Positions 51,140 through 58,877 of a DNA stretch of 64,000 nucleotides are shown here, piece after piece. Made by a program: the position numbers and the translations under genes. Position 1 is the stretch's first letter. The number at the start of each line of letters is the position of its first letter. The notes under the pieces are model-generated. The model was given only the letters and a program-made list of their open reading frames with translations. It ran no database searches and was not told where the DNA came from. The stretch lies in IMG/VR virus record IMGVR_UViG_3300015261_000001, positions 62,001-126,000 of that record. One strand, written 5' to 3'.

Positions 51140-51186
51140 TAACCCTCCCAGCCCTTTGCGGGGCTGGGAGGGTTAGCCTTATGCCG
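51140..51186. terminator. Hairpin between convergent genes, followed by TTATGCCG
   Basis: TAACCCTCCCAGCCC-TTTGCG-GGGCTGGGAGGGTTA. Confidence 0.85.
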
Positions 51187-54100
51187 CTCTACGAAGTTGC
51201 AGGTGTCGTTTATTCCGTTCCAGTTTAGCGTCGTCGATGATACTGTCGATCGTCATCAGGCGAGACTGTTCTGGTGGCAGGAGTTTAACGAGTTTACGGA
51301 TTTCAGCTTCCAGTCGCAGCGCCAACAGGTTGTCGTTGGTAGTCAACAACTCATCGGTCAACTGAGCAACTTTGGCCTTCACCTTGCCCATGAACTGAAC
51401 CACATGCGGTTCCATCGCTGGAGCAGCGCTAGGGTTGTTCTCGTTCAAGATGTTGCGGGTCTCTGTCAGAGCAATACCCGGCGGAATACCGTAAAGGGAT
51501 TTGTTCATCCCCAGCTTAATAAACCAGTAACTGAGAAGCCACGCGATAACCAAGTCATCGTGCATTTTCTTGTCGTGGTCTATTCGATCGCCTCGAGTTT
51601 TCAAGTTGATCAGCTCGTCTGCCAGTTTCGGATAGTTCAAACCGTAACCGGTGTTGCCCACCGCTTCCATGATCAGACCATACAGGGTGTCCCGAGAAGT
51701 CTTGGTCGTCACAAACCCGAAGTGTTGCTTGTACTTCAGGTAGAAGTTCTTGGTGCGGTTACTGAAGGTAGTGCGGCGGATCTCTTCGTACTCGTTTTCA
51801 TGGTTAACGGTGTCTTGATAGATCGCGTTGTAAATCCGTTGGAACGGATCCATGCCTTTAGCAGGCAACATAATCAGCAGACTGTCGATCATGTGGTGAG
51901 CGTAGTTACGCTCAATGACCAGCAAGCTGTTCTTGATTACGTCCAGCAGGTCCACCAGGATGTTGGTGACGTTATCCAAGAAGGTCAGTGCGTAGCGACC
52001 TACTCCTACCACCTTACCGGTCCTCATACTTCGAATGATGATGGTGCAGGCGTCCTTGTTGATTGCCGACGAAGTATCACAACCGATCAAGAAGAAGTCG
52101 TTGTGTTCCTTCTTGCTCATCTCCACCAGCTCTTGCTGCGTCACAAAGAAGTCCATGTACAACTGGCTGTCTTTGTACTCCTTGCTCCAAACCACCTCCC
52201 GCTTCATGTTGTTGATAGCTTCACGAGTTACGTCGTCAAACAGGCGGTTCTCACCGTCCTCTACCCACATGAGCAGCAAGTCGATCTTCGCCTTGGCCAA
52301 GCTCAAGCTAAGTTCGTCGATAACTTCCTTCACCCAGGTTTTGTCTTTACCCAGTTGCAGGTAGTTATAAACCATACTGACCGACGGAGACGTGGTCTCT
52401 TTCGGAGACGCCCGGATTAGGCGTTGTTTCAGATGGCTCTCACCGAACGAGTCGAAGAAGCTTTCACGCCACTCGGTTGCAGTCATCAGACGCTTGAACA
52501 TGAAATCACCGCTAGGGTGCAGTGTCGTGTTCGGCGTAGTGATGTGGTTAATACCGTACGGCAACCCAGCAACTCGGCAGTTGCTCATTTCTGTCAGTGC
52601 CGAAGGCGCGCAACCGTCGATGATGGTCTCAATGAAGCTGATGTAAGCAGACTCATCATAGTTGGTGGTGCCTACCCGGAGACCCCGTCCCAAGTCACCA
52701 GCTTGCGCCTGACTTTGTTGCGGAACGTTAACGTACATAGTGTTGATTTTGTCTTCACCGAAAGCTTTGTACGTCAGGGAAGTACCAGCGTCCTTGTCCT
52801 TGTAGCTTGAGTTGATCAAGTACTTGGGGATACTGTTCCGAATGGTCTTGATGGCGTTGATGAACTGAGCGCGGTTGTCAGACTTCAGTGTAATCAGGTG
52901 AGAGGTGTAACCCCGACCCATGATGTACGTCAACCAGAAGTTGATTACCTGCACCGCCACAGTGTTGTGGGTCACCAAGAACTCATCGGTGATGTACAGG
53001 TGTTCTACCGCGTCCACTTCAATACACGTGCACTCGTCGTCACCGGCATACTTGATGTCGGTAATGAACAGGGCGTTGGTGGTGTAAACTGGTTTCGGTT
53101 TTTCCGCAAGGTAGAAGTAGTCAATAGCTTCCGGCAGGGTAATAGTCACGCCCGTTTTGGTCTTCTTGGCGGTACCGCCAAAGCTCCGAGCGAGGTAACT
53201 CAATTGACCTGTCATAGCACGCCCTACAGCCACGTGCGCCGAATCCTTCCCTACCGTAGCCCCAACGTCGAGAAACGCGTGGAGCAGCTTCTTACGGTCT
53301 TCTAGAGCACCTTCAAGGTACTCCGGCGCGGCACCGTACTCCGCGTTCACCGAAAACGGCTTTCCATCCGCTCGCCAGAGGATAGTGGCGTCCTGATTAC
53401 CAGCAACTTCCACACCCATTGGCAGATTGACGTACAGATATTGAAGCTGTGCTGCATTGAGACCCTGAAGGTGGATCTCCTTACCCACTTCCTCACCTTG
53501 CAGTAACAGACCCAGAACATAAGGGTCGATTGGCAGCTGTTGCTTAGGACCATCCTCGGCATCAATCAACGGCAGTTGGAGCTTGGCACCTTTCTTTAGA
53601 CGCTCAATCAAGCCTGAAGTGGTGTAGTCATCCCAATAAGCTTTGCCTTCATGCTTGTCGGAATGGTCTCGGGCTGTCCACAAGTGTTCAGTGCCCACAT
53701 CGGTATAACGACCATCACTGGTGTACACGCGATATAGCCGCTTGGTCCCTTGTGGGTGAATGCCGATAACTGTTGCTTCATTGCCGTAACGGTCAACGAT
53801 GGCTTCGCCTACTTGCAAGTCACCGATCTTCTTCCAGGTATCTTTAGTCGTGATGTTGCGACCAAGGTCCTTTGTTTTAATCCGCACCTTTGAACTGTTA
53901 CGCTGCAACTTGCCCTGCTGACGAGGCATGATCATGTACGTGGTAACGTGGTTCAGGTAAGACCACATGAAACTGATGTTACCGCGGTTAGCACGAAATC
54001 CGTGAGTCGGACCCAGACGACAGACTTCTCGCAAGAAGTACCAGAAGTTGGTTCGGGTCTCCTGAGCGATCATGGTGATCTGCTCGTTGGTCAGCTCTTC

Positions 54101-54451
54101 GGAATAAGGATCCAGTCCTTGCAACAACGGGTTGTTCAGTTGAAGCAAGAAGTAGTAGTTCTTGATACCTTGGCGACGGAAGATTTCAGCAGTCCGCAAG
54201 AACGAGGTGTTTTTCGTTCCAAGGTCAGGGGCGGCGCTGTACAGGTGGAAGTCTTTCAAGAAGCGAACAGTCTTGATGCCCCACAAGCTGTCTTCGTTGT
54301 AATGAGCCAGCAAAAGCTCATCTTCGGATCGACTCTCTGGATCGATACGCTTCTTCCGATCGTCGATCAACGTCTTAGGGAGGTTGTTGCTTCCTAAGTA
54401 GTCGACCAACTTTTTTGCAAAGAGAAGATTCTCATTGTCAGTTGTGTCCAT
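51179..54451 (-). CDS. terL: Terminase large subunit with intein
   Basis: Walker A PRQQGK|TV interrupted by an intein, GRG, Walker B NYDESAY, TTP, nuclease IGCDTS..VIERN..HDDLVIAW. Confidence 0.95.
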   Translation of the reverse strand: MDTTDNENLLFAKKLVDYLGSNNLPKTLIDDRKKRIDPESRSEDELLLAHYNEDSLWGIKTVRFLKDFHLYSAAPDLGTKNTSFLRTAEIFRRQGIKNYYFLLQLNNPLLQGLDPYSEELTNEQITMIAQETRTNFWYFLREVCRLGPTHGFRANRGNISFMWSYLNHVTTYMIMPRQQGKLQRNSSKVRIKTKDLGRNITTKDTWKKIGDLQVGEAIVDRYGNEATVIGIHPQGTKRLYRVYTSDGRYTDVGTEHLWTARDHSDKHEGKAYWDDYTTSGLIERLKKGAKLQLPLIDAEDGPKQQLPIDPYVLGLLLQGEEVGKEIHLQGLNAAQLQYLYVNLPMGVEVAGNQDATILWRADGKPFSVNAEYGAAPEYLEGALEDRKKLLHAFLDVGATVGKDSAHVAVGRAMTGQLSYLARSFGGTAKKTKTGVTITLPEAIDYFYLAEKPKPVYTTNALFITDIKYAGDDECTCIEVDAVEHLYITDEFLVTHNTVAVQVINFWLTYIMGRGYTSHLITLKSDNRAQFINAIKTIRNSIPKYLINSSYKDKDAGTSLTYKAFGEDKINTMYVNVPQQSQAQAGDLGRGLRVGTTNYDESAYISFIETIIDGCAPSALTEMSNCRVAGLPYGINHITTPNTTLHPSGDFMFKRLMTATEWRESFFDSFGESHLKQRLIRASPKETTSPSVSMVYNYLQLGKDKTWVKEVIDELSLSLAKAKIDLLLMWVEDGENRLFDDVTREAINNMKREVVWSKEYKDSQLYMDFFVTQQELVEMSKKEHNDFFLIGCDTSSAINKDACTIIIRSMRTGKVVGVGRYALTFLDNVTNILVDLLDVIKNSLLVIERNYAHHMIDSLLIMLPAKGMDPFQRIYNAIYQDTVNHENEYEEIRRTTFSNRTKNFYLKYKQHFGFVTTKTSRDTLYGLIMEAVGNTGYGLNYPKLADELINLKTRGDRIDHDKKMHDDLVIAWLLSYWFIKLGMNKSLYGIPPGIALTETRNILNENNPSAAPAMEPHVVQFMGKVKAKVAQLTDELLTTNDNLLALRLEAEIRKLVKLLPPEQSRLMTIDSIIDDAKLERNKRHLQLRRAA
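52964..53908 (-). mobile_element. Class-3-type intein (315 aa) in the terL Walker A, with degenerate LAGLIDADG domain
   Basis: WKKIGDLQVGE, block B EHLW, block F CTCIEVD, block G VTHN|T. Removing it restores PRQQGKTVAV. Confidence 0.9.
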
Positions 54452-54541: not shown

Positions 54542-56272
54542 TTACGGCAGCAAATCAACCGTAACAGCCGATTGACCGAGTTGCAGTTCAACGCCCGCTG
54601 CATCGCGGCTGACCCATTGGATGAACCAGGTCTGACCTTGTTGCAGTTGGATACCGAGGACGTTGTTCTTGTTCCAGTCGGTCGCAATGGTAAAGCGCCA
54701 TTTGCGTTTGTCGACTGGGTGCATCAGGTAGAAGTGAGTCGGCTCTGGAGCTTTCTCTTCATCGAAACGGTTGTAGCTCGGCTCAACACCACGGTACATC
54801 GCCTTCAACCAGTTCTCGACCAGATAGATATCCTGCGAGATGTTGACGGTAGTGGTGATGCCTGCGTTCTTGGTCTTCGCGAACATGCCGCCGTAGAACG
54901 GTTTGTTCGGCGAGAAGCCAACGTCCCAACGCTTACCGGTGCCGTTGATGTCCTTGTACAAGATGATCGTGGTGTGCTGGTTGAAGATAACGCTTTCATA
55001 CAGCGGCGACACGTCTTTCAAGTTCAAGTTGAAGATCAGCGACTGAGACACGCCGTACGACACAGGACGCCATGGTTCCGACTTGTCGTTGAACGTGACC
55101 TTGGCGGTAACGTCGAGCGCAGTCTTGCGGTCCAAGTCGTACAGGTAGTGCGACAAGCTCCAACCACTGATTGCCGGATCCCACACTGGGAAGGTGTAGA
55201 TCTTCGGCGAGTAAGCACCTTTGACCGCGGCCGACTGTACCCGATAGATACGGTTGGTGTGATCCGGTGTACCCGGCTTCGGCATGTAAGCTTGTTCATT
55301 TGGCTGGTGTTTGTAGATGAGGTTGAGTTCACCTTCTTGCCCAGGCCAGGTCGGACGATATTCGTTCACACCGTACAGGCTGAAACGTTCACCGTTGACT
55401 GGGAGCGGCTCTGGACTGACACTACCGTCGGAGTAATGCACGATCGCACGCAGTTCTACTGCTGGAATCAAAACGTTCATCGGGATGATGAGCAGTTCTG
55501 GGTCCATGGTGTTGGTGAACCATGGCGACAGCAGTTCGACCTCGGTCACGTACTTGGTACCGATCTGGTGGTCTTTCATGTACGAGCAATGCTGAACCAT
55601 CAGCGGTTGAGCAGGTGGAATGTAATCACCGCCCTCGTCGTAGAACACCAGCCAGCAACGAGTACCGTCTTTCAGCGCTTCTTCGTTCATGGTGACACTG
55701 AATGGACCAGTGGTCATGATCGAGACGTTGGTGCGGTCGACGATTTCAGCCAACTTGCATGGCACCTTGTTGGTGGTCATGTTGTTGGACTTGTCGTACT
55801 GAGCACTGATGATCGCCGTTTCAACAGCAGCGCTGCCGAGGAACACTTTGGCGTAAGCAGCACCCGGACGCATGATGGTCGCGTCAACACGAGCCACGTT
55901 TGGGCGCACGCTGTAATCGATCGACAGCAGTGCTTCACCGGCCATTGGACCACCACGCAGGCCGTAGATCCAATCCTGCTCAGTAGTCGCGTCTTCGTTA
56001 CCGTTGATCAACGCCCAAGGAACAAGCGTTGCTTTTTGGGTAGCCTGACTATCGACGTGAGCCACCCGCAGGATCACACCGTTGTTGACGTCGAAGACCA
56101 GCCAGTTCTCTTTCGGCACGACGTACTTGGTTTGATCCTCTGGTGGATGCTTGTCAGGATCGAACATGTCCTCGATATAGAGGAACATCCCCCGCTGGGG
56201 ATTGTTGGTCGTAGAAGCGGCGGTTGCAGCAATCGCGCGCTCCGCAGACGTACTGGGTTTATCATCGAACAT
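54542..56272 (-). CDS. Virion structural protein (phiKZ gp26 position)
   Basis: 576 aa, beta-rich, syntenic between terL and the sheath gene. Confidence 0.7.
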   Translation of the reverse strand: MFDDKPSTSAERAIAATAASTTNNPQRGMFLYIEDMFDPDKHPPEDQTKYVVPKENWLVFDVNNGVILRVAHVDSQATQKATLVPWALINGNEDATTEQDWIYGLRGGPMAGEALLSIDYSVRPNVARVDATIMRPGAAYAKVFLGSAAVETAIISAQYDKSNNMTTNKVPCKLAEIVDRTNVSIMTTGPFSVTMNEEALKDGTRCWLVFYDEGGDYIPPAQPLMVQHCSYMKDHQIGTKYVTEVELLSPWFTNTMDPELLIIPMNVLIPAVELRAIVHYSDGSVSPEPLPVNGERFSLYGVNEYRPTWPGQEGELNLIYKHQPNEQAYMPKPGTPDHTNRIYRVQSAAVKGAYSPKIYTFPVWDPAISGWSLSHYLYDLDRKTALDVTAKVTFNDKSEPWRPVSYGVSQSLIFNLNLKDVSPLYESVIFNQHTTIILYKDINGTGKRWDVGFSPNKPFYGGMFAKTKNAGITTTVNISQDIYLVENWLKAMYRGVEPSYNRFDEEKAPEPTHFYLMHPVDKRKWRFTIATDWNKNNVLGIQLQQGQTWFIQWVSRDAAGVELQLGQSAVTVDLLP

Positions 56273-58877
56273 TGTTGTTTACCTCGAAATGACCTTCAAT
56301 CACACAAACTGAATTGAGGTAACTGGCGTTGACTTGGCGGATAAAGGCCATCTCATTTGCAGTCACGGTTACCAACCCGAAGTTGGCGTAAGGCATGATC
56401 GCAAAGTACCGACGATCAAACTCCAACGGAACCGGGTCGTACTTCAGCCACCACATGTAAGGGGCAACCTGTTCCCGGACGAACTGTTCCGTGTAACCTT
56501 CTTCCATGTCTTCCAATGCGGGCAAGACCAGCAGCCGATTTAGGATGGCGTTAACAATCACGCTCAAGAACGGGCTGAACAACCGATACTTATCCTGCAT
56601 GTTTGGGATAACAGGATTAGTGTTCGGTTTAGGGAGATACAAGGTCAAGTAGTCACTGACCCGCTGGTCCACAGCACGACTTTCTTTGAACCCTGGGAAG
56701 TTGTCATACGGCTCGACGTACTTAATCGGACAGTAGACGTGTTTCACCATGTACGGGCGACCGTTCAGGTGGTTCCACAGGTTATCAGGAGAATGGGTCT
56801 CCGCGTTGGGTACTTCATCAGTGACATACAGAGCGCCATTGATGACTGTGCGAGTAACCCGATCTTCCCGCAGGTTGTAGCGAGGGAAACGACCGATCAC
56901 ACCACCGTCGACAAAGCCCAACTCGGTATCCCGCTTTGGCTTGGTCTGATCTTCCCAGAACTGGTGACCCCGGTAGGTAATGACCTGCGGACCATCAACA
57001 ATGAACTCCTTGTTGAAGATGTAGCAGTAGCCGTCCTTGTAGATCCAATCGACGTTGTCGATCAGCGGGTGACCGTTGAGGAAGACCTCGGTGTTGGCAA
57101 ACGAGATCGGGAAGATCAAGCCGCCATCTTCGTAGATCTGGGTTTGGGCGAACGCCAAGCTGTGGTCGATGTGATCCAACTCAAACGTGTACGCCAAGTG
57201 TGCCGTGTTGAACAACAGCACACCACGCTGGTTGACATGGTCCAGCCCGCGCCATACCAAAGTACCGTTAACGATACCGTAGATGGTTTCATCCCCCGTC
57301 ACATCGGTCAGAGGTCCTTGGATCTCTTGAGCGTCGATGTTGTAGAAGCTGGTGTAGACCCGGAAGTCGTTCACCGCGCTGATCGGAATGTCGGTGTTGA
57401 TAATGATCGAATCCAACTTGCGAGCATACTGACCAACAATGAACTCCACCAACTTGCACTCGGGGTTAACCGGGTTGTAGTAACGAGTGTTGATCCGGTT
57501 GTAGTAACCCAGCAACAAACCGTCGGCGTCGTATTCCCACGCACTGAAGGTTTCACGGTAAGTGAACGGAATCTCGATCCCGCGACCACCAGCCTCATAT
57601 TCCACATGCAACGGCGATTCGCTGAGCACACGAGTAGCGGCGTTGTAGCCCACTGCCAGCTTGGCGCCCACCCGGTCCAGATTCTTCATCTGCTTACGGG
57701 TAAAACTCATGACCACACCTTTCTCAAGGTTTGGCGCAGTCCACTCAGGAACAGTGGCGCGATCACCGGTCATTGCCCGGACGATACCGACGTCATCCAT
57801 CCGGTACAGATAACGAATGCGTTGATGTTCATGCGGCCACTGGTGTTCCCAGTCGGTACGGCGAACCAACACTAATACCCGGATATCCGATACATTGGAC
57901 AAGGCTGGGTGGTATTCGCTGGCTGCATGAACAGCGTCGTCAGAAATACTGACGTCAACATGAGTCAACTGACGGATAGCGGTGATGTCATTTCGATGGA
58001 AGTACAAACCATATGGGGTTTTGCCCAGCAGGTAGAAGTCATTGTCATCGAAGTAACGGAACGTAAAGTCACCGGGGCGTTTTGGCGGATGGATGATCAG
58101 CTTGCGCTTCTGGTCCAAGTCCGAGTAAAAGTCTTTGAGGCTGGCGTACGCGTAAATCTCGGAACGAATCACGGTTGGGTCATGGAAGACCTCGACCACG
58201 TCACCCACTGCCAGTTTGGGAATGGTGTTGGGTGCACCGTGGTAATACGCGCCGTTATGGATCACCCCAGTAAAGCCGGCTTTGTTCTTGTAGAACTGAT
58301 AGCGGGCAGTAAAGGTAGCCAATTCCGCAGGACTTTCGTAGACCATGGTCTCGTAAGCGTACGGGTTGGTTTGGGGTAGATCGACTTGTTCGTTACGCGC
58401 CACCGCGATCGAAGCCGTGTAGCAACGGAAGTACATCTCCTCACCACGGGCGATCGGGTAAACCTTGGTCTTTTCCAGAGCGATCAGGGTCAGGCCGTCA
58501 TAGGTGGTCATGAGCCACGCTTTGCTGCGACTGTACTGGTAGCCCTTGGTGTTGTAAACATCCAGCTGCACGCCGCGACGTTTGCACAGGTCGCCCATGT
58601 TGATCCAACGATCGAGTGGGTTGCGGCGCAGTACGCTGGTGCGGAAGTTCCAGTACCCGGCATCGAGACCTGCTACGCTGAACACATAGTAGAACGTGTC
58701 ACGCTTCGGCAACGTCCTCCATTTATTCATGTAGGTGAAGTTGTCGATGTCGCCGTAGTAGTCGCTGATCCGAACGGTTTTAACCTGGTACTGGTGGTTC
58801 TCCTCTGGATTACCCCACAAGTTGTCGGTAGCGTACTCCAACAAGGGGTTATCGGTGTCAAACCCTTTCAAGATCAT
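56262..58877 (-). CDS. Virion structural protein (phiKZ gp27 position)
   Basis: 871 aa. Assigned by synteny. Confidence 0.7.
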   Translation of the reverse strand: MILKGFDTDNPLLEYATDNLWGNPEENHQYQVKTVRISDYYGDIDNFTYMNKWRTLPKRDTFYYVFSVAGLDAGYWNFRTSVLRRNPLDRWINMGDLCKRRGVQLDVYNTKGYQYSRSKAWLMTTYDGLTLIALEKTKVYPIARGEEMYFRCYTASIAVARNEQVDLPQTNPYAYETMVYESPAELATFTARYQFYKNKAGFTGVIHNGAYYHGAPNTIPKLAVGDVVEVFHDPTVIRSEIYAYASLKDFYSDLDQKRKLIIHPPKRPGDFTFRYFDDNDFYLLGKTPYGLYFHRNDITAIRQLTHVDVSISDDAVHAASEYHPALSNVSDIRVLVLVRRTDWEHQWPHEHQRIRYLYRMDDVGIVRAMTGDRATVPEWTAPNLEKGVVMSFTRKQMKNLDRVGAKLAVGYNAATRVLSESPLHVEYEAGGRGIEIPFTYRETFSAWEYDADGLLLGYYNRINTRYYNPVNPECKLVEFIVGQYARKLDSIIINTDIPISAVNDFRVYTSFYNIDAQEIQGPLTDVTGDETIYGIVNGTLVWRGLDHVNQRGVLLFNTAHLAYTFELDHIDHSLAFAQTQIYEDGGLIFPISFANTEVFLNGHPLIDNVDWIYKDGYCYIFNKEFIVDGPQVITYRGHQFWEDQTKPKRDTELGFVDGGVIGRFPRYNLREDRVTRTVINGALYVTDEVPNAETHSPDNLWNHLNGRPYMVKHVYCPIKYVEPYDNFPGFKESRAVDQRVSDYLTLYLPKPNTNPVIPNMQDKYRLFSPFLSVIVNAILNRLLVLPALEDMEEGYTEQFVREQVAPYMWWLKYDPVPLEFDRRYFAIMPYANFGLVTVTANEMAFIRQVNASYLNSVCVIEGHFEVNNNVR

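What the first reader, a model, noticed from the sequence alone, without database searches (positions are those of the whole stretch)
52964..53908. Class-3 intein starting with Leu, splitting the terminase Walker A, with a decayed homing endonuclease
Seen: the insertion lies between GK and T, and its first residue is Leu (TTG) rather than Cys, Ser or Ala. The Trp-Cys-Thr class-3 signature is present (EHLW, CTCIEV, VTHN) with Thr at +1. The LAGLIDADG helices lack their catalytic acidic pattern (LGLLLQGE, LHAFLDVG). Known: class-3 inteins use the block-F Cys and usually begin with Ala, and I recall phage EL having a terminase intein. Inference: an immobile intein retained in an essential gene, whose splicing could gate DNA packaging.
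Basis: partly seen in the sequence, partly recalled or inferred. Interest (0 to 1): 0.6.

Follow-up and report, generated by a model that had tools for sequence, protein, structure and literature searches.

The report
Class-3 intein in jumbo-phage terminase
The DNA-packaging motor gene of this soil jumbo phage is interrupted, inside its ATP-binding loop, by a self-splicing protein element (a class-3-type intein) whose mobility enzyme is dead; this is a well-known kind of element, and its odd first residue (Leu) is normal for its family.

Summary
Window 52964-53908 (minus strand) encodes a 315-residue insert between Gly-Lys and Thr of the Walker A loop (PRQQGK|T) of a 1090-residue terminase large subunit. 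The phage is EL-like and comes from a rhizosphere metagenome. The insert starts with Leu (TTG). It carries every class-3 sequence mark: His75, Trp77, block-F Cys295, Thr313-His314-Asn315 and Thr+1. These residues are invariant in all 107 intein-bearing homologue clusters, and 13 intein-less homologues read seamlessly GKT. An AlphaFold model (pLDDT 96) matches PI-SceI over 297 residues (Z 23.5) and the solved class-3 DnaB intein (Z 18.7, rmsd 1.6 Å). The middle domain has the LAGLIDADG fold but lacks both catalytic acids. The same is true in the whole 71-member EL-like clade, where the intein co-diverges with the exteins and no empty allele was found. Leu1 is not special: position 1 takes 12 different residues, and Leu is joint commonest. 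Phage EL's own copy starts with Gln. The dead endonuclease is still constrained (dN/dS about 0.1-0.3). Splicing that gates packaging is untested speculation. Verdict: a new member of a known kind, of modest interest.

The parts
51179..54451 (-). Terminase large subunit precursor gene (1090 codons plus stop), intein included
   Evidence: ORF. 68.6% aa identity to Pseudomonas phage EL gp11, annotated 'terminase large subunit'. PHROG phrog_2 terminase large subunit, E 1.4e-37.
53909..54451 (-). N-extein (residues 1-181), ending in the first part of Walker A, PRQQGK
   Evidence: Alignment with 13 intein-less homologues that read ...PRQxGK|TV... without a gap. The phrog_2 match ends at residue 183.
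52964..53908 (-). Intein, 315 residues (Leu1 to Asn315)
   Evidence: AlphaFold2 model pLDDT 96.2. PI-SceI Z 23.5 with 297 residues aligned; class-3 Msm DnaB intein 6bs8 Z 18.7, rmsd 1.6 Å.
53906..53908 (-). Intein residue 1, Leu (TTG), not a nucleophile
   Evidence: Family distribution at this position: L22 M22 A15 F12 E9 Y8 P5 G5 Q4 D3 C1 S1.
53606..53908 (-). N-terminal lobe of the Hint splicing domain (intein residues 1-101; blocks A and B)
   Evidence: Beta-strand rich in the model. phmmer match to gp41-1 intein residues 6-71. Fold matches to mini-inteins.
53678..53686 (-). Block B His75-Leu76-Trp77 (B10 His and the class-3 Trp at B12)
   Evidence: His and Trp invariant in 107/107. Coordinates.
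53078..53605 (-). Catalytically dead LAGLIDADG homing-endonuclease domain (intein residues 102-277)
   Evidence: Alignment with family members that keep canonical motifs. The fold match to PI-SceI, TliVMA and PI-PfuI covers it, and I-DmoI and WhiA also hit. dN/dS 0.11-0.34.
53495..53524 (-). First LAGLIDADG motif remnant, PYVLGLLLQG (canonical relatives: PYVLGVLLGDG); catalytic Asp missing through a one-residue deletion
   Evidence: Helix 129-136 in the model.
53258..53290 (-). Second LAGLIDADG motif remnant, KLLHAFLDVGA (canonical relatives: LLQGLLDTDG); catalytic Asp replaced by Gly216
   Evidence: Helix 202-216 in the model.
52964..53077 (-). C-terminal lobe of the Hint domain (intein residues 278-315; blocks F and G)
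53024..53026 (-). Block F position 4 Cys295, the inferred first nucleophile of class-3 splicing
   Evidence: Invariant in 107/107. The neighbouring Cys293 is present in only 46/107. Coordinates.
52964..52972 (-). Block G Thr313 (class-3 Thr), penultimate His314, terminal Asn315
   Evidence: All three invariant in 107/107. Coordinates.
52961..52963 (-). Thr+1, first C-extein residue and the Thr of Walker A GKT
   Evidence: Invariant in 107/107 intein-bearing and present in all 13 intein-less homologues.
51179..52963 (-). C-extein (precursor residues 497-1090 plus stop): the rest of the ATPase and the nuclease part of the terminase

Best explanation
This is a class-3-type intein that a whole clade of EL-like jumbo phages inherits vertically. 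It sits at the classic P-loop site, between the Lys and the Thr of the terminase large subunit's Walker A motif.

The precursor cannot form an ATP-binding loop, so the terminase becomes active only after the intein removes itself.

Inferred mechanism, by homology with the Bethlehem DnaB and mycobacterial DnaB-1 inteins:
1. Cys295 (block F position 4), helped by His75 and Trp77, attacks the Lys181-Leu1 peptide bond and takes the N-extein as a thioester.
2. The N-extein passes to the hydroxyl of Thr+1.
3. Asn315 cyclises and frees the intein.
4. An O-to-N shift makes the Lys-Thr bond, restoring GKT.

Residue 1 does no chemistry, which is why it drifts freely (Leu here).

The embedded LAGLIDADG endonuclease has lost both catalytic Asp residues, so the element can no longer home. 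It persists because only a precise deletion in an essential loop would remove it. The dead domain is kept as a folded, mildly constrained scaffold.

Shown: the anatomy, the conservation, the fold and the pattern of inheritance. Inferred: the chemistry and that splicing occurs.
For: - Boundaries: 13 intein-less homologues read GK|TV seamlessly.
- Splice residues: His B10, Trp B12, Cys F4, Thr G5, His, Asn and Thr+1 are each 107/107, while residue 1 takes 12 identities.
- Residue 1 at the DNA level: its codons differ mostly by single-base steps, and Leu is TTG or CTG in independent assemblies.
- Fold: model pLDDT 96.2, pTM 0.93. PI-SceI Z 23.5 with 297/315 aligned; class-3 Msm DnaB-1 intein 6bs8 Z 18.7, rmsd 1.6 Å, 24% identity. 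Foldseek E 7e-12. phmmer to the gp41-1 intein E 1e-5.
- Endonuclease status: only 15/107 relatives keep GDG and DTDG. All 71 EL-like members, including the query, lack both acids.
- Inheritance: the EL-like clade (SH-aLRT 100) is uniformly intein-bearing. Other clades are mosaics of empty, canonical, degenerate and mini alleles, including an identical-extein pair with and without the intein.
- Co-divergence: intein and extein distances correlate inside the clade (Spearman 0.69-0.73) but not outside it (0.21-0.24).
- Constraint on the dead domain: dN/dS 0.11-0.34, against 0.06-0.08 for the extein. Eighteen of its positions are at least 90% conserved.
- Literature: class-3 definition and mechanism in PMC2807308 and PMC5222942; GK|T described as the 'classic' P-loop site in terminases in PMC5050341.
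Against: - No experiment shows splicing of this or any EL-like terminase intein.
- No Pfam or NCBIfam intein model recognises it, so class membership rests on motifs, homology and a predicted fold.
- dS is partly saturated (0.6-2), so the dN/dS values are rough.
- The search lists 90%-identity clusters from metagenomes. An empty EL-like allele could therefore exist unsampled.
- Silent sites diverge faster in the intein than in the exteins, which simple strict co-inheritance does not predict.
Confidence: 0.88

Rival explanations
1. The dead LAGLIDADG domain, or the catalytic Cys, has been taken over as a regulator. Splicing would then be conditional (on redox state, metal, DNA or prohead binding) and would time terminase activation.
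For: - The dead domain keeps a near-constant length (mostly 310-318 aa inteins) and dN/dS well under 1 across deep divergence.
- A P-loop class-3 DnaB intein is reversibly blocked by oxidation of its block-F Cys (PMC6195587).
- The query has a second Cys two residues before Cys295.
- WhiA, a catalytically inactive LAGLIDADG-fold DNA binder, appears among the fold matches.
Against: - Cys293 is present in only 46/107 relatives, so no conserved redox pair exists.
- Several EL-like lineages have deleted parts of the domain (255-285 aa inteins), so the full domain is not required.
- The domain evolves 2-5 times faster than the extein in dN/dS.
- Fold stability needed for efficient splicing explains the constraint without any new function.
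- There are no experimental data.
Confidence: 0.08
2. The intein splices by another route: class-2-like direct attack of Thr+1 on the N-terminal junction, without a Cys295 thioester.
For: Like class 2, it lacks a residue-1 nucleophile. The mechanism was not tested here.
Against: - Class 2 inteins lack the Trp-Cys-Thr triplet (PMC2807308); here all three are invariant in 107/107.
- The closest solved Hint domains by rmsd include the class-3 DnaB-1 inteins.
- In the prototype, the block-F Cys is absolutely required (PMC2807308).
Confidence: 0.03
3. The endonuclease is still active through non-canonical residues (for example Glu139 or Glu140 after the first motif), and the intein still homes.
For: The query has Glu-Glu just after the first motif. 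Glu can replace Asp in some LAGLIDADG enzymes (my own recollection, not checked here).
Against: - These Glu residues are not conserved even in the nearest relatives (ARNEG, ARNQG, GRNVE).
- The second motif has Gly, Lys or Arg at the catalytic position throughout the clade.
- Compared with canonical relatives, about 35-45 residues are missing from the endonuclease domain; that these are DNA-contact regions is my assignment.
- Co-divergence with the exteins, and no empty alleles to invade.
Confidence: 0.02
4. It is a non-splicing domain insertion that stays in the mature terminase.
For: None beyond the lack of direct splicing data.
Against: - It splits the Lys and Thr of the P-loop.
- Every residue needed for splicing is invariant while the rest of the insert evolves fast.
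- Close homologues work without it.
Confidence: 0.01

Closest known systems
Pseudomonas phage EL gp11 terminase intein (orthologue). From memory, InBase lists it as the phiEL ORF11 intein; I could not check that here.
   Same: Same gene, same GK|T site, same class-3 residues, and the same dead LAGLIDADG domain. It is 313 aa against 315 aa here. Whole-protein identity is 68.6%.
   Different: EL's intein begins with Gln (CAG), this one with Leu (TTG). The EL RefSeq record does not annotate an intein. This copy comes from an uncultured rhizosphere virus of 238 kb.
Mycobacteriophage Bethlehem DnaB intein, the class-3 prototype (Tori et al. 2010, PMC2807308)
   Same: No residue-1 nucleophile, the Trp-Cys-Thr triplet, Thr+1, a helicase/ATPase-type host protein, and a size of 341 aa consistent with a full-size intein.
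   Different: It begins with Pro and sits in DnaB after Gln, not in a terminase GK|T site. Its splicing and its need for the block-F Cys are shown by experiment; here they are only inferred.
Mycobacterium smegmatis / M. chimaera DnaB-1 class-3 mini-inteins (PDB 6bs8, 6rix; PMC6195587, PMC7664689)
   Same: Inserted GVGK|A...|S/T at the same P-loop position. The Hint fold superposes at 1.6-1.9 Å over about 124 residues with 23-24% identity.
   Different: These are mini-inteins with only a disordered linker where this one keeps a folded dead endonuclease. They begin with Ala. Redox control through Cys48-Cys118 is shown for them; no equivalent conserved Cys pair exists here.
Mycobacteriophage TerL1-a terminase inteins (Kelley et al. 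2016, PMC5050341)
   Same: Intein between the invariant Lys and the Thr of the terminase Walker A, called there the 'classic' P-loop insertion. Class-3 inteins are also reported in TerL proteins.
   Different: The terminase family is unrelated (actinophage TerL1 against the jumbo-phage terminase). Many of those inteins keep active endonucleases and show recent spread.
PI-SceI and the archaeal VMA / PI-PfuI inteins (PDB 1vde, 7qsu, 1dq3)
   Same: Two-domain Hint plus LAGLIDADG architecture. Best overall structural match: Z 23.5, 297 residues aligned.
   Different: They are class-1 inteins (Cys1 nucleophile) with active endonucleases and extra DNA-recognition regions. Sequence identity is only 12-15%.

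Membership tests
Intein (Hint-fold protein-splicing element) | In-frame insert that is absent from close homologues, with exteins that join seamlessly | tested here: met
   13 intein-less homologues (772-787 aa) read GK|TV. One pair has identical exteins with and without the insert.
Intein (Hint-fold protein-splicing element) | Hint fold formed by the N- and C-terminal lobes | tested here: met
   Model pLDDT 96.2. Z 14-19 to many solved mini-inteins and to the hedgehog autoprocessing domain.
Intein (Hint-fold protein-splicing element) | C-terminal His-Asn followed by a Cys, Ser or Thr at +1 | tested here: met
   His314-Asn315 | Thr+1, each invariant in 107/107.
Intein (Hint-fold protein-splicing element) | The element actually splices | not testable with these tools
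   Inferred from the essential P-loop position and the invariance of the splice residues. No protein data are available.
Class 3 intein | No Cys, Ser or Thr nucleophile at intein position 1 | tested here: met
   Leu (TTG). 105 of 107 relatives also lack a nucleophile there.
Class 3 intein | Trp at block B position 12, two residues after the block B His | tested here: met
   His75-Leu76-Trp77; His and Trp are 107/107.
Class 3 intein | Cys at block F position 4 | tested here: met
   Cys295 in T-C-I-E-V-D, 107/107. It aligns with the engineered Cys of gp41-1_WCT (6riz) in the ...CIEV... segment.
Class 3 intein | Thr at block G position 5 | tested here: met
   Thr313, 107/107.
Class 3 intein | Ser or Thr (rarely Cys) at +1 | tested here: met
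   Thr+1, 107/107.
Class 3 intein | Splicing depends on the block-F Cys and passes through two branched intermediates | not testable with these tools
   Needs Cys295 mutants and mass spectrometry of intermediates, as in PMC2807308 and PMC5222942.
LAGLIDADG homing endonuclease (active) | Double LAGLIDADG alpha/beta fold | tested here: met
   The PI-SceI, TliVMA and PI-PfuI alignments span the middle domain, and I-DmoI hits it. Helices 129-136 and 202-216 lie at the motif positions.
LAGLIDADG homing endonuclease (active) | An acidic catalytic residue at the end of each LAGLIDADG helix | tested here: not met
   Motif 1 has a deletion at the Asp position (LLQ-GE against LLGDG). Motif 2 has Gly216 (LDVGA against LDTDG). 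There is no conserved acid in any of the 71 clade members.
LAGLIDADG homing endonuclease (active) | Evidence of mobility (sporadic distribution; intein tree at odds with the host tree) | tested here: not met
   The intein is fixed in the whole EL-like clade and co-diverges with the exteins. Other clades that keep canonical motifs do show mobility.
Phage terminase large subunit | Homology to known terminase large subunits, with a Walker A ATPase motif | tested here: met
   phrog_2, E 1.4e-37. Homologues are annotated as terminase large subunit in phages EL, RisingSun, FishSpeaker and Yubaba. PRQQGK|T is restored on removing the insert.
Phage terminase large subunit | ATPase and packaging activity | not testable with these tools

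The most novel reading that the evidence does not exclude
The catalytically dead LAGLIDADG domain has been kept for a new job. It has stayed at a near-constant length and under purifying selection through the whole radiation of EL-like jumbo phages. The new job could be sensing DNA, the prohead or the redox state, so that terminase maturation by splicing is timed within the infection cycle. The freely drifting residue 1 would then tune splicing speed lineage by lineage.
Probability: 0.08. Interest if true: 0.65.

Novelty: new member of a known kind. Interest (0 to 1): 0.3.

Why it matters
For annotation: standard domain libraries miss both the terminase and its intein. As a result, relatives are filed as helicase, gyrase, 'DarB-like antirestriction' or hypothetical protein.

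For intein biology: the family gives a clean natural series at one site. It contains active-endonuclease, dead-endonuclease, trimmed, mini and empty alleles. It also amounts to a natural mutational scan of position 1 of a class-3 intein, with 12 residues tolerated. This fits the view that residue 1 does no chemistry.

Phage EL is culturable, so whether P-loop splicing limits or times DNA packaging could be tested directly. None of this changes current understanding of inteins.

Tried and rejected
- Pfam-A and NCBIfam scans of the precursor and of the intein gave no relevant hit at E<=1.
- The search for related loci in viral contigs with the intein alone found only two loci, and I did not use them further.
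- Supplementary tables of Tori et al. 2010 are not held, and Tori & Perler 2011 is not held. I therefore could not verify whether the EL intein is listed among published class-3 inteins, nor the published spread of residue-1 identities.
- Searches for 'intein' with 'phiEL' or 'phage EL' found no paper that describes this intein.
- YN00 dN/dS failed on several small, saturated partitions, so I report NG86 values and a 4-fold-site count instead.
- The reads check could not confirm the TTG codon independently. The two runs that cover it may be the source sample, and the third study's contigs stop short of it.
- I rejected Leu1 as a sequencing error, because relatives from other assemblies have TTG or CTG there.
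- I rejected a shifted boundary, because only L1...N315 removal restores GKT.
- Tools not used: the large representative-protein search (the word search answered the question), complex prediction, and any alternative genetic code.
- I sent no joined (spliced) extein sequence to any search tool. Exteins were only concatenated as alignment columns inside scripts, for the tree and the distance analyses.
Full report
**What is there**

The window is part of a complete 238,193-bp virus record with direct terminal repeats (window = contig positions 62001-126000). Three rhizosphere metagenome runs hold the stretch.

On the minus strand, 51179-54451 is a 1090-codon ORF. By tblastn it is 68.6% identical over its full length to gp11 of Pseudomonas phage EL, annotated 'terminase large subunit'. 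It is 55-57% identical to the same gene of Erwinia phages RisingSun and Joad and Shewanella phage FishSpeaker. PHROGs family phrog_2 (terminase large subunit) matches at E 1.4e-37, and that match stops at residue 183. Pfam-A and NCBIfam recognise nothing in the protein.

Residues 182-496 of the precursor (window 53908 down to 52964, 315 aa) lie between ...PRQQGK and TVAVQV.... The first codon is TTG (Leu) at 53906-53908. The last three codons are Thr-His-Asn, and the next is Thr.

A word search of public proteins returned 120 listed homologues. After alignment, 107 carry an insert at exactly this point. Thirteen (772-787 aa) have none and read GK|TV without a gap. The boundaries are therefore unambiguous, and excision restores a canonical Walker A, GKT.

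**Class-3 signature**

| Position | Residue | Count among 107 intein-bearing sequences |
|---|---|---|
| Block B position 10 | His75 | 107 |
| Block B position 12 | Trp77 | 107 |
| Block F position 4 | Cys295 | 107 |
| Block G position 5 | Thr313 | 107 |
| Penultimate | His314 | 107 |
| Terminal | Asn315 | 107 |
| +1 | Thr | 107 |

The first, Cys293, is present in only 46 of 107.

These are the features by which Tori et al. defined class 3: a non-nucleophilic residue 1 co-varying with a Trp-Cys-Thr triplet and Ser/Thr at +1. That paper noted the class mostly sits in ATPase P-loops, terminase large subunits included (PMC2807308). Kelley et al. call the Lys|Thr position of the terminase Walker A the 'classic' P-loop insertion (PMC5050341). 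The mycobacterial class-3 DnaB-1 inteins sit at the equivalent GVGK|A...|S/T position.

**Leu1 is ordinary for this family**

Position 1 is L22, M22, A15, F12, E9, Y8, P5, G5, Q4, D3, C1, S1. On the extein tree it changes in blocks by lineage. At the DNA level most neighbouring states differ by one base:
- TTG or CTG for Leu
- ATG for Met
- CAG for Gln
- TTC or TTT for Phe
- TAC for Tyr

Phage EL's own intein starts with Gln. The class-3 prototype starts with Pro and tolerates Ala, Ser and Cys there, with reduced efficiency. The DnaB-1 inteins start with Ala. So 'Leu rather than Ala' is not an anomaly. It is what a position with no chemical role should look like.

A third study's contigs do not reach it. 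Independent assemblies of relatives with TTG or CTG at this position are the better support.

**Fold**

I made an alignment of the intein against 102 intein-bearing homologues and used it for an AlphaFold2 model. The model has mean pLDDT 96.2 and pTM 0.93.

| Match | Result |
|---|---|
| PI-SceI, Foldseek | E 7e-12 |
| PI-SceI, VIA-align | Z 23.5, rmsd 3.7 Å, 297 of 315 residues aligned |
| TliVMA, PhoVMA, PI-PfuI | next-best two-domain matches |
| Class-3 Msm DnaB-1 intein, 6bs8 | Z 18.7, rmsd 1.6 Å, 123 residues, 24% identity |
| MchDnaB-1, 6rix | Z 18.0 |
| I-DmoI and WhiA | separate matches to the middle domain |

By sequence alone, the best solved relative is the gp41-1 intein (E 1e-5).

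**The endonuclease is dead but not dissolved**

Fifteen of the 107 relatives (inteins of 346-363 aa) keep canonical motifs, PYVLGVLLGDG and LLQGLLDTDG. The query has PYVLGLLLQ-GE and LLHAFLDVGA. This means a one-residue deletion at the first catalytic Asp and Gly216 at the second. None of the 71 members of its clade has a conserved acid at either place. Compared with the canonical members, the clade also lacks about 35-45 residues elsewhere in the endonuclease domain.

Several observations show the domain is still constrained:
- It is confidently folded in the model.
- It keeps 18 positions at 90% conservation or more within the clade.
- It keeps a nearly constant length, with most inteins at 310-318 aa.

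| Partition | NG86 dN/dS in five close pairs |
|---|---|
| Dead endonuclease domain | 0.11-0.34 (0.24-0.61 if scaled to the extein dS) |
| Exteins | 0.06-0.08 |
| Hint lobes | 0.02-0.08 |

dS is 0.6-2, so these figures are rough. They point to relaxed but real purifying selection. Three or four lineages in the clade have trimmed the domain further (255-285 aa), so its full length is not indispensable.

**Immobile here, mobile elsewhere**

On a maximum-likelihood tree of the exteins alone, the query sits in a clade of 71 sequences (SH-aLRT 100). Every member of that clade carries a dead-endonuclease intein.

In the sister clades, empty, canonical, degenerate and mini (156 aa) alleles are interleaved. 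These clades include relatives of the Aeromonas, Vibrio, Klebsiella and Serratia jumbo phages listed. One canonical-endonuclease allele (P0081) has exteins identical to the intein-less terminase of Serratia phage Yubaba (P0114).

Within the EL-like clade, pairwise intein and extein distances track each other (Spearman 0.69 for Hint, 0.73 for the dead domain). Essentially no pair has an intein more alike than its exteins. Outside the clade the correlations are 0.24 and 0.21. There, inteins in terminases only 26-29% identical in their exteins are 50-60% identical in their Hint domains.

This is the expected life cycle of a homing element, and in the query's clade it has reached the fixed, immobile stage.

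**How it most likely works**

- Shown: the anatomy, the conservation, the fold and the mode of inheritance.
- Inferred from the characterised class-3 inteins (PMC2807308, PMC5222942):
  1. Cys295, positioned by His75 and Trp77, attacks the Lys181-Leu1 bond and carries the N-extein as a thioester.
  2. The N-extein moves to the Thr+1 hydroxyl.
  3. Asn315 cyclises.
  4. An O-to-N shift restores GKT.
- Also inferred: the intein splits the P-loop, so the precursor should be inactive as an ATPase and splicing is obligatory for packaging.
- Untested: whether splicing is regulated. The only support is analogy with the redox-sensitive DnaB-1 intein (PMC6195587), and the Cys partner that intein uses has no conserved counterpart here.

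**Novelty**

Class-3 inteins at GK|T of phage terminases are established knowledge, and phage EL carries the orthologue. From memory, InBase lists it as the phiEL ORF11 intein; I could not check this, and no paper in the held library describes it. This is a new member of a known kind.

The modest added value lies in the family-wide picture: the natural scan of residue 1, the graded series of endonuclease decay at a single site, and a clade-wide fixed dead-endonuclease intein. It also lies in showing that standard annotation misses the element.

**Limits and housekeeping**

Exteins were concatenated only as alignment columns inside scripts.

Noticed in passing
Outside the window: own genome G000:C1 about 168020-168826 (+), loci L005/L006: A second class-3-type intein in the same virus. 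It sits in an ORF of about 985 aa that I read as SNF2/helicase-like (not family-scanned). It is again inserted in a P-loop (PGSGK|AMPL...VVTHN|TFT), with EHLW, LCISID and THN, and it begins with Ala. Its N-terminal lobe is 32% identical to the terminase intein (39% over the last 38 residues).
   Followed up: partly
Protein P0119 (metagenome terminase homologue; alignment): Two inteins three residues apart in one Walker A loop. The layout is PRQ | a mini-intein (begins Ala; DHLW, QCIEVD, VSHN) | TGK | a 350-aa intein (begins Asp, ends THN) | T.
   Followed up: no
Proteins P0081 and P0114: A terminase with a canonical-motif LAGLIDADG intein has exteins identical to those of the intein-less terminase of Serratia phage Yubaba. 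This implies a very recent invasion or a precise loss.
   Followed up: no
window 51179-54451 and five relatives' loci (L007-L015): Silent (4-fold) sites differ more inside the intein than in the exteins of the same gene in all five close pairs. The figures are extein 0.35-0.52 and intein 0.47-0.63, with p from 0.0001 to 0.14. In the query, GC3 is 0.67 in the exteins and 0.57 in the intein. Codon-usage constraint or extein-only recombination could explain this; it is not resolved.
   Followed up: partly
window 51179-54451; GenBank/RefSeq records of relatives: Pfam-A and NCBIfam give no hit to this terminase or its intein. Orthologues in public phage records are variously named ATP-dependent DNA helicase, DarB-like antirestriction, DNA gyrase subunit A or hypothetical protein.
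   Followed up: partly
window 54542-56272 (-) and 56262-58877 (-): Two large ORFs (576 and 871 aa) lie just upstream of the terminase on the same strand. Phage EL has ORFs of similar size in the same place: gp9, annotated 'virion structural protein', and gp8, 'hypothetical protein'. The window's two ORFs were not compared with them or analysed further.
   Followed up: no
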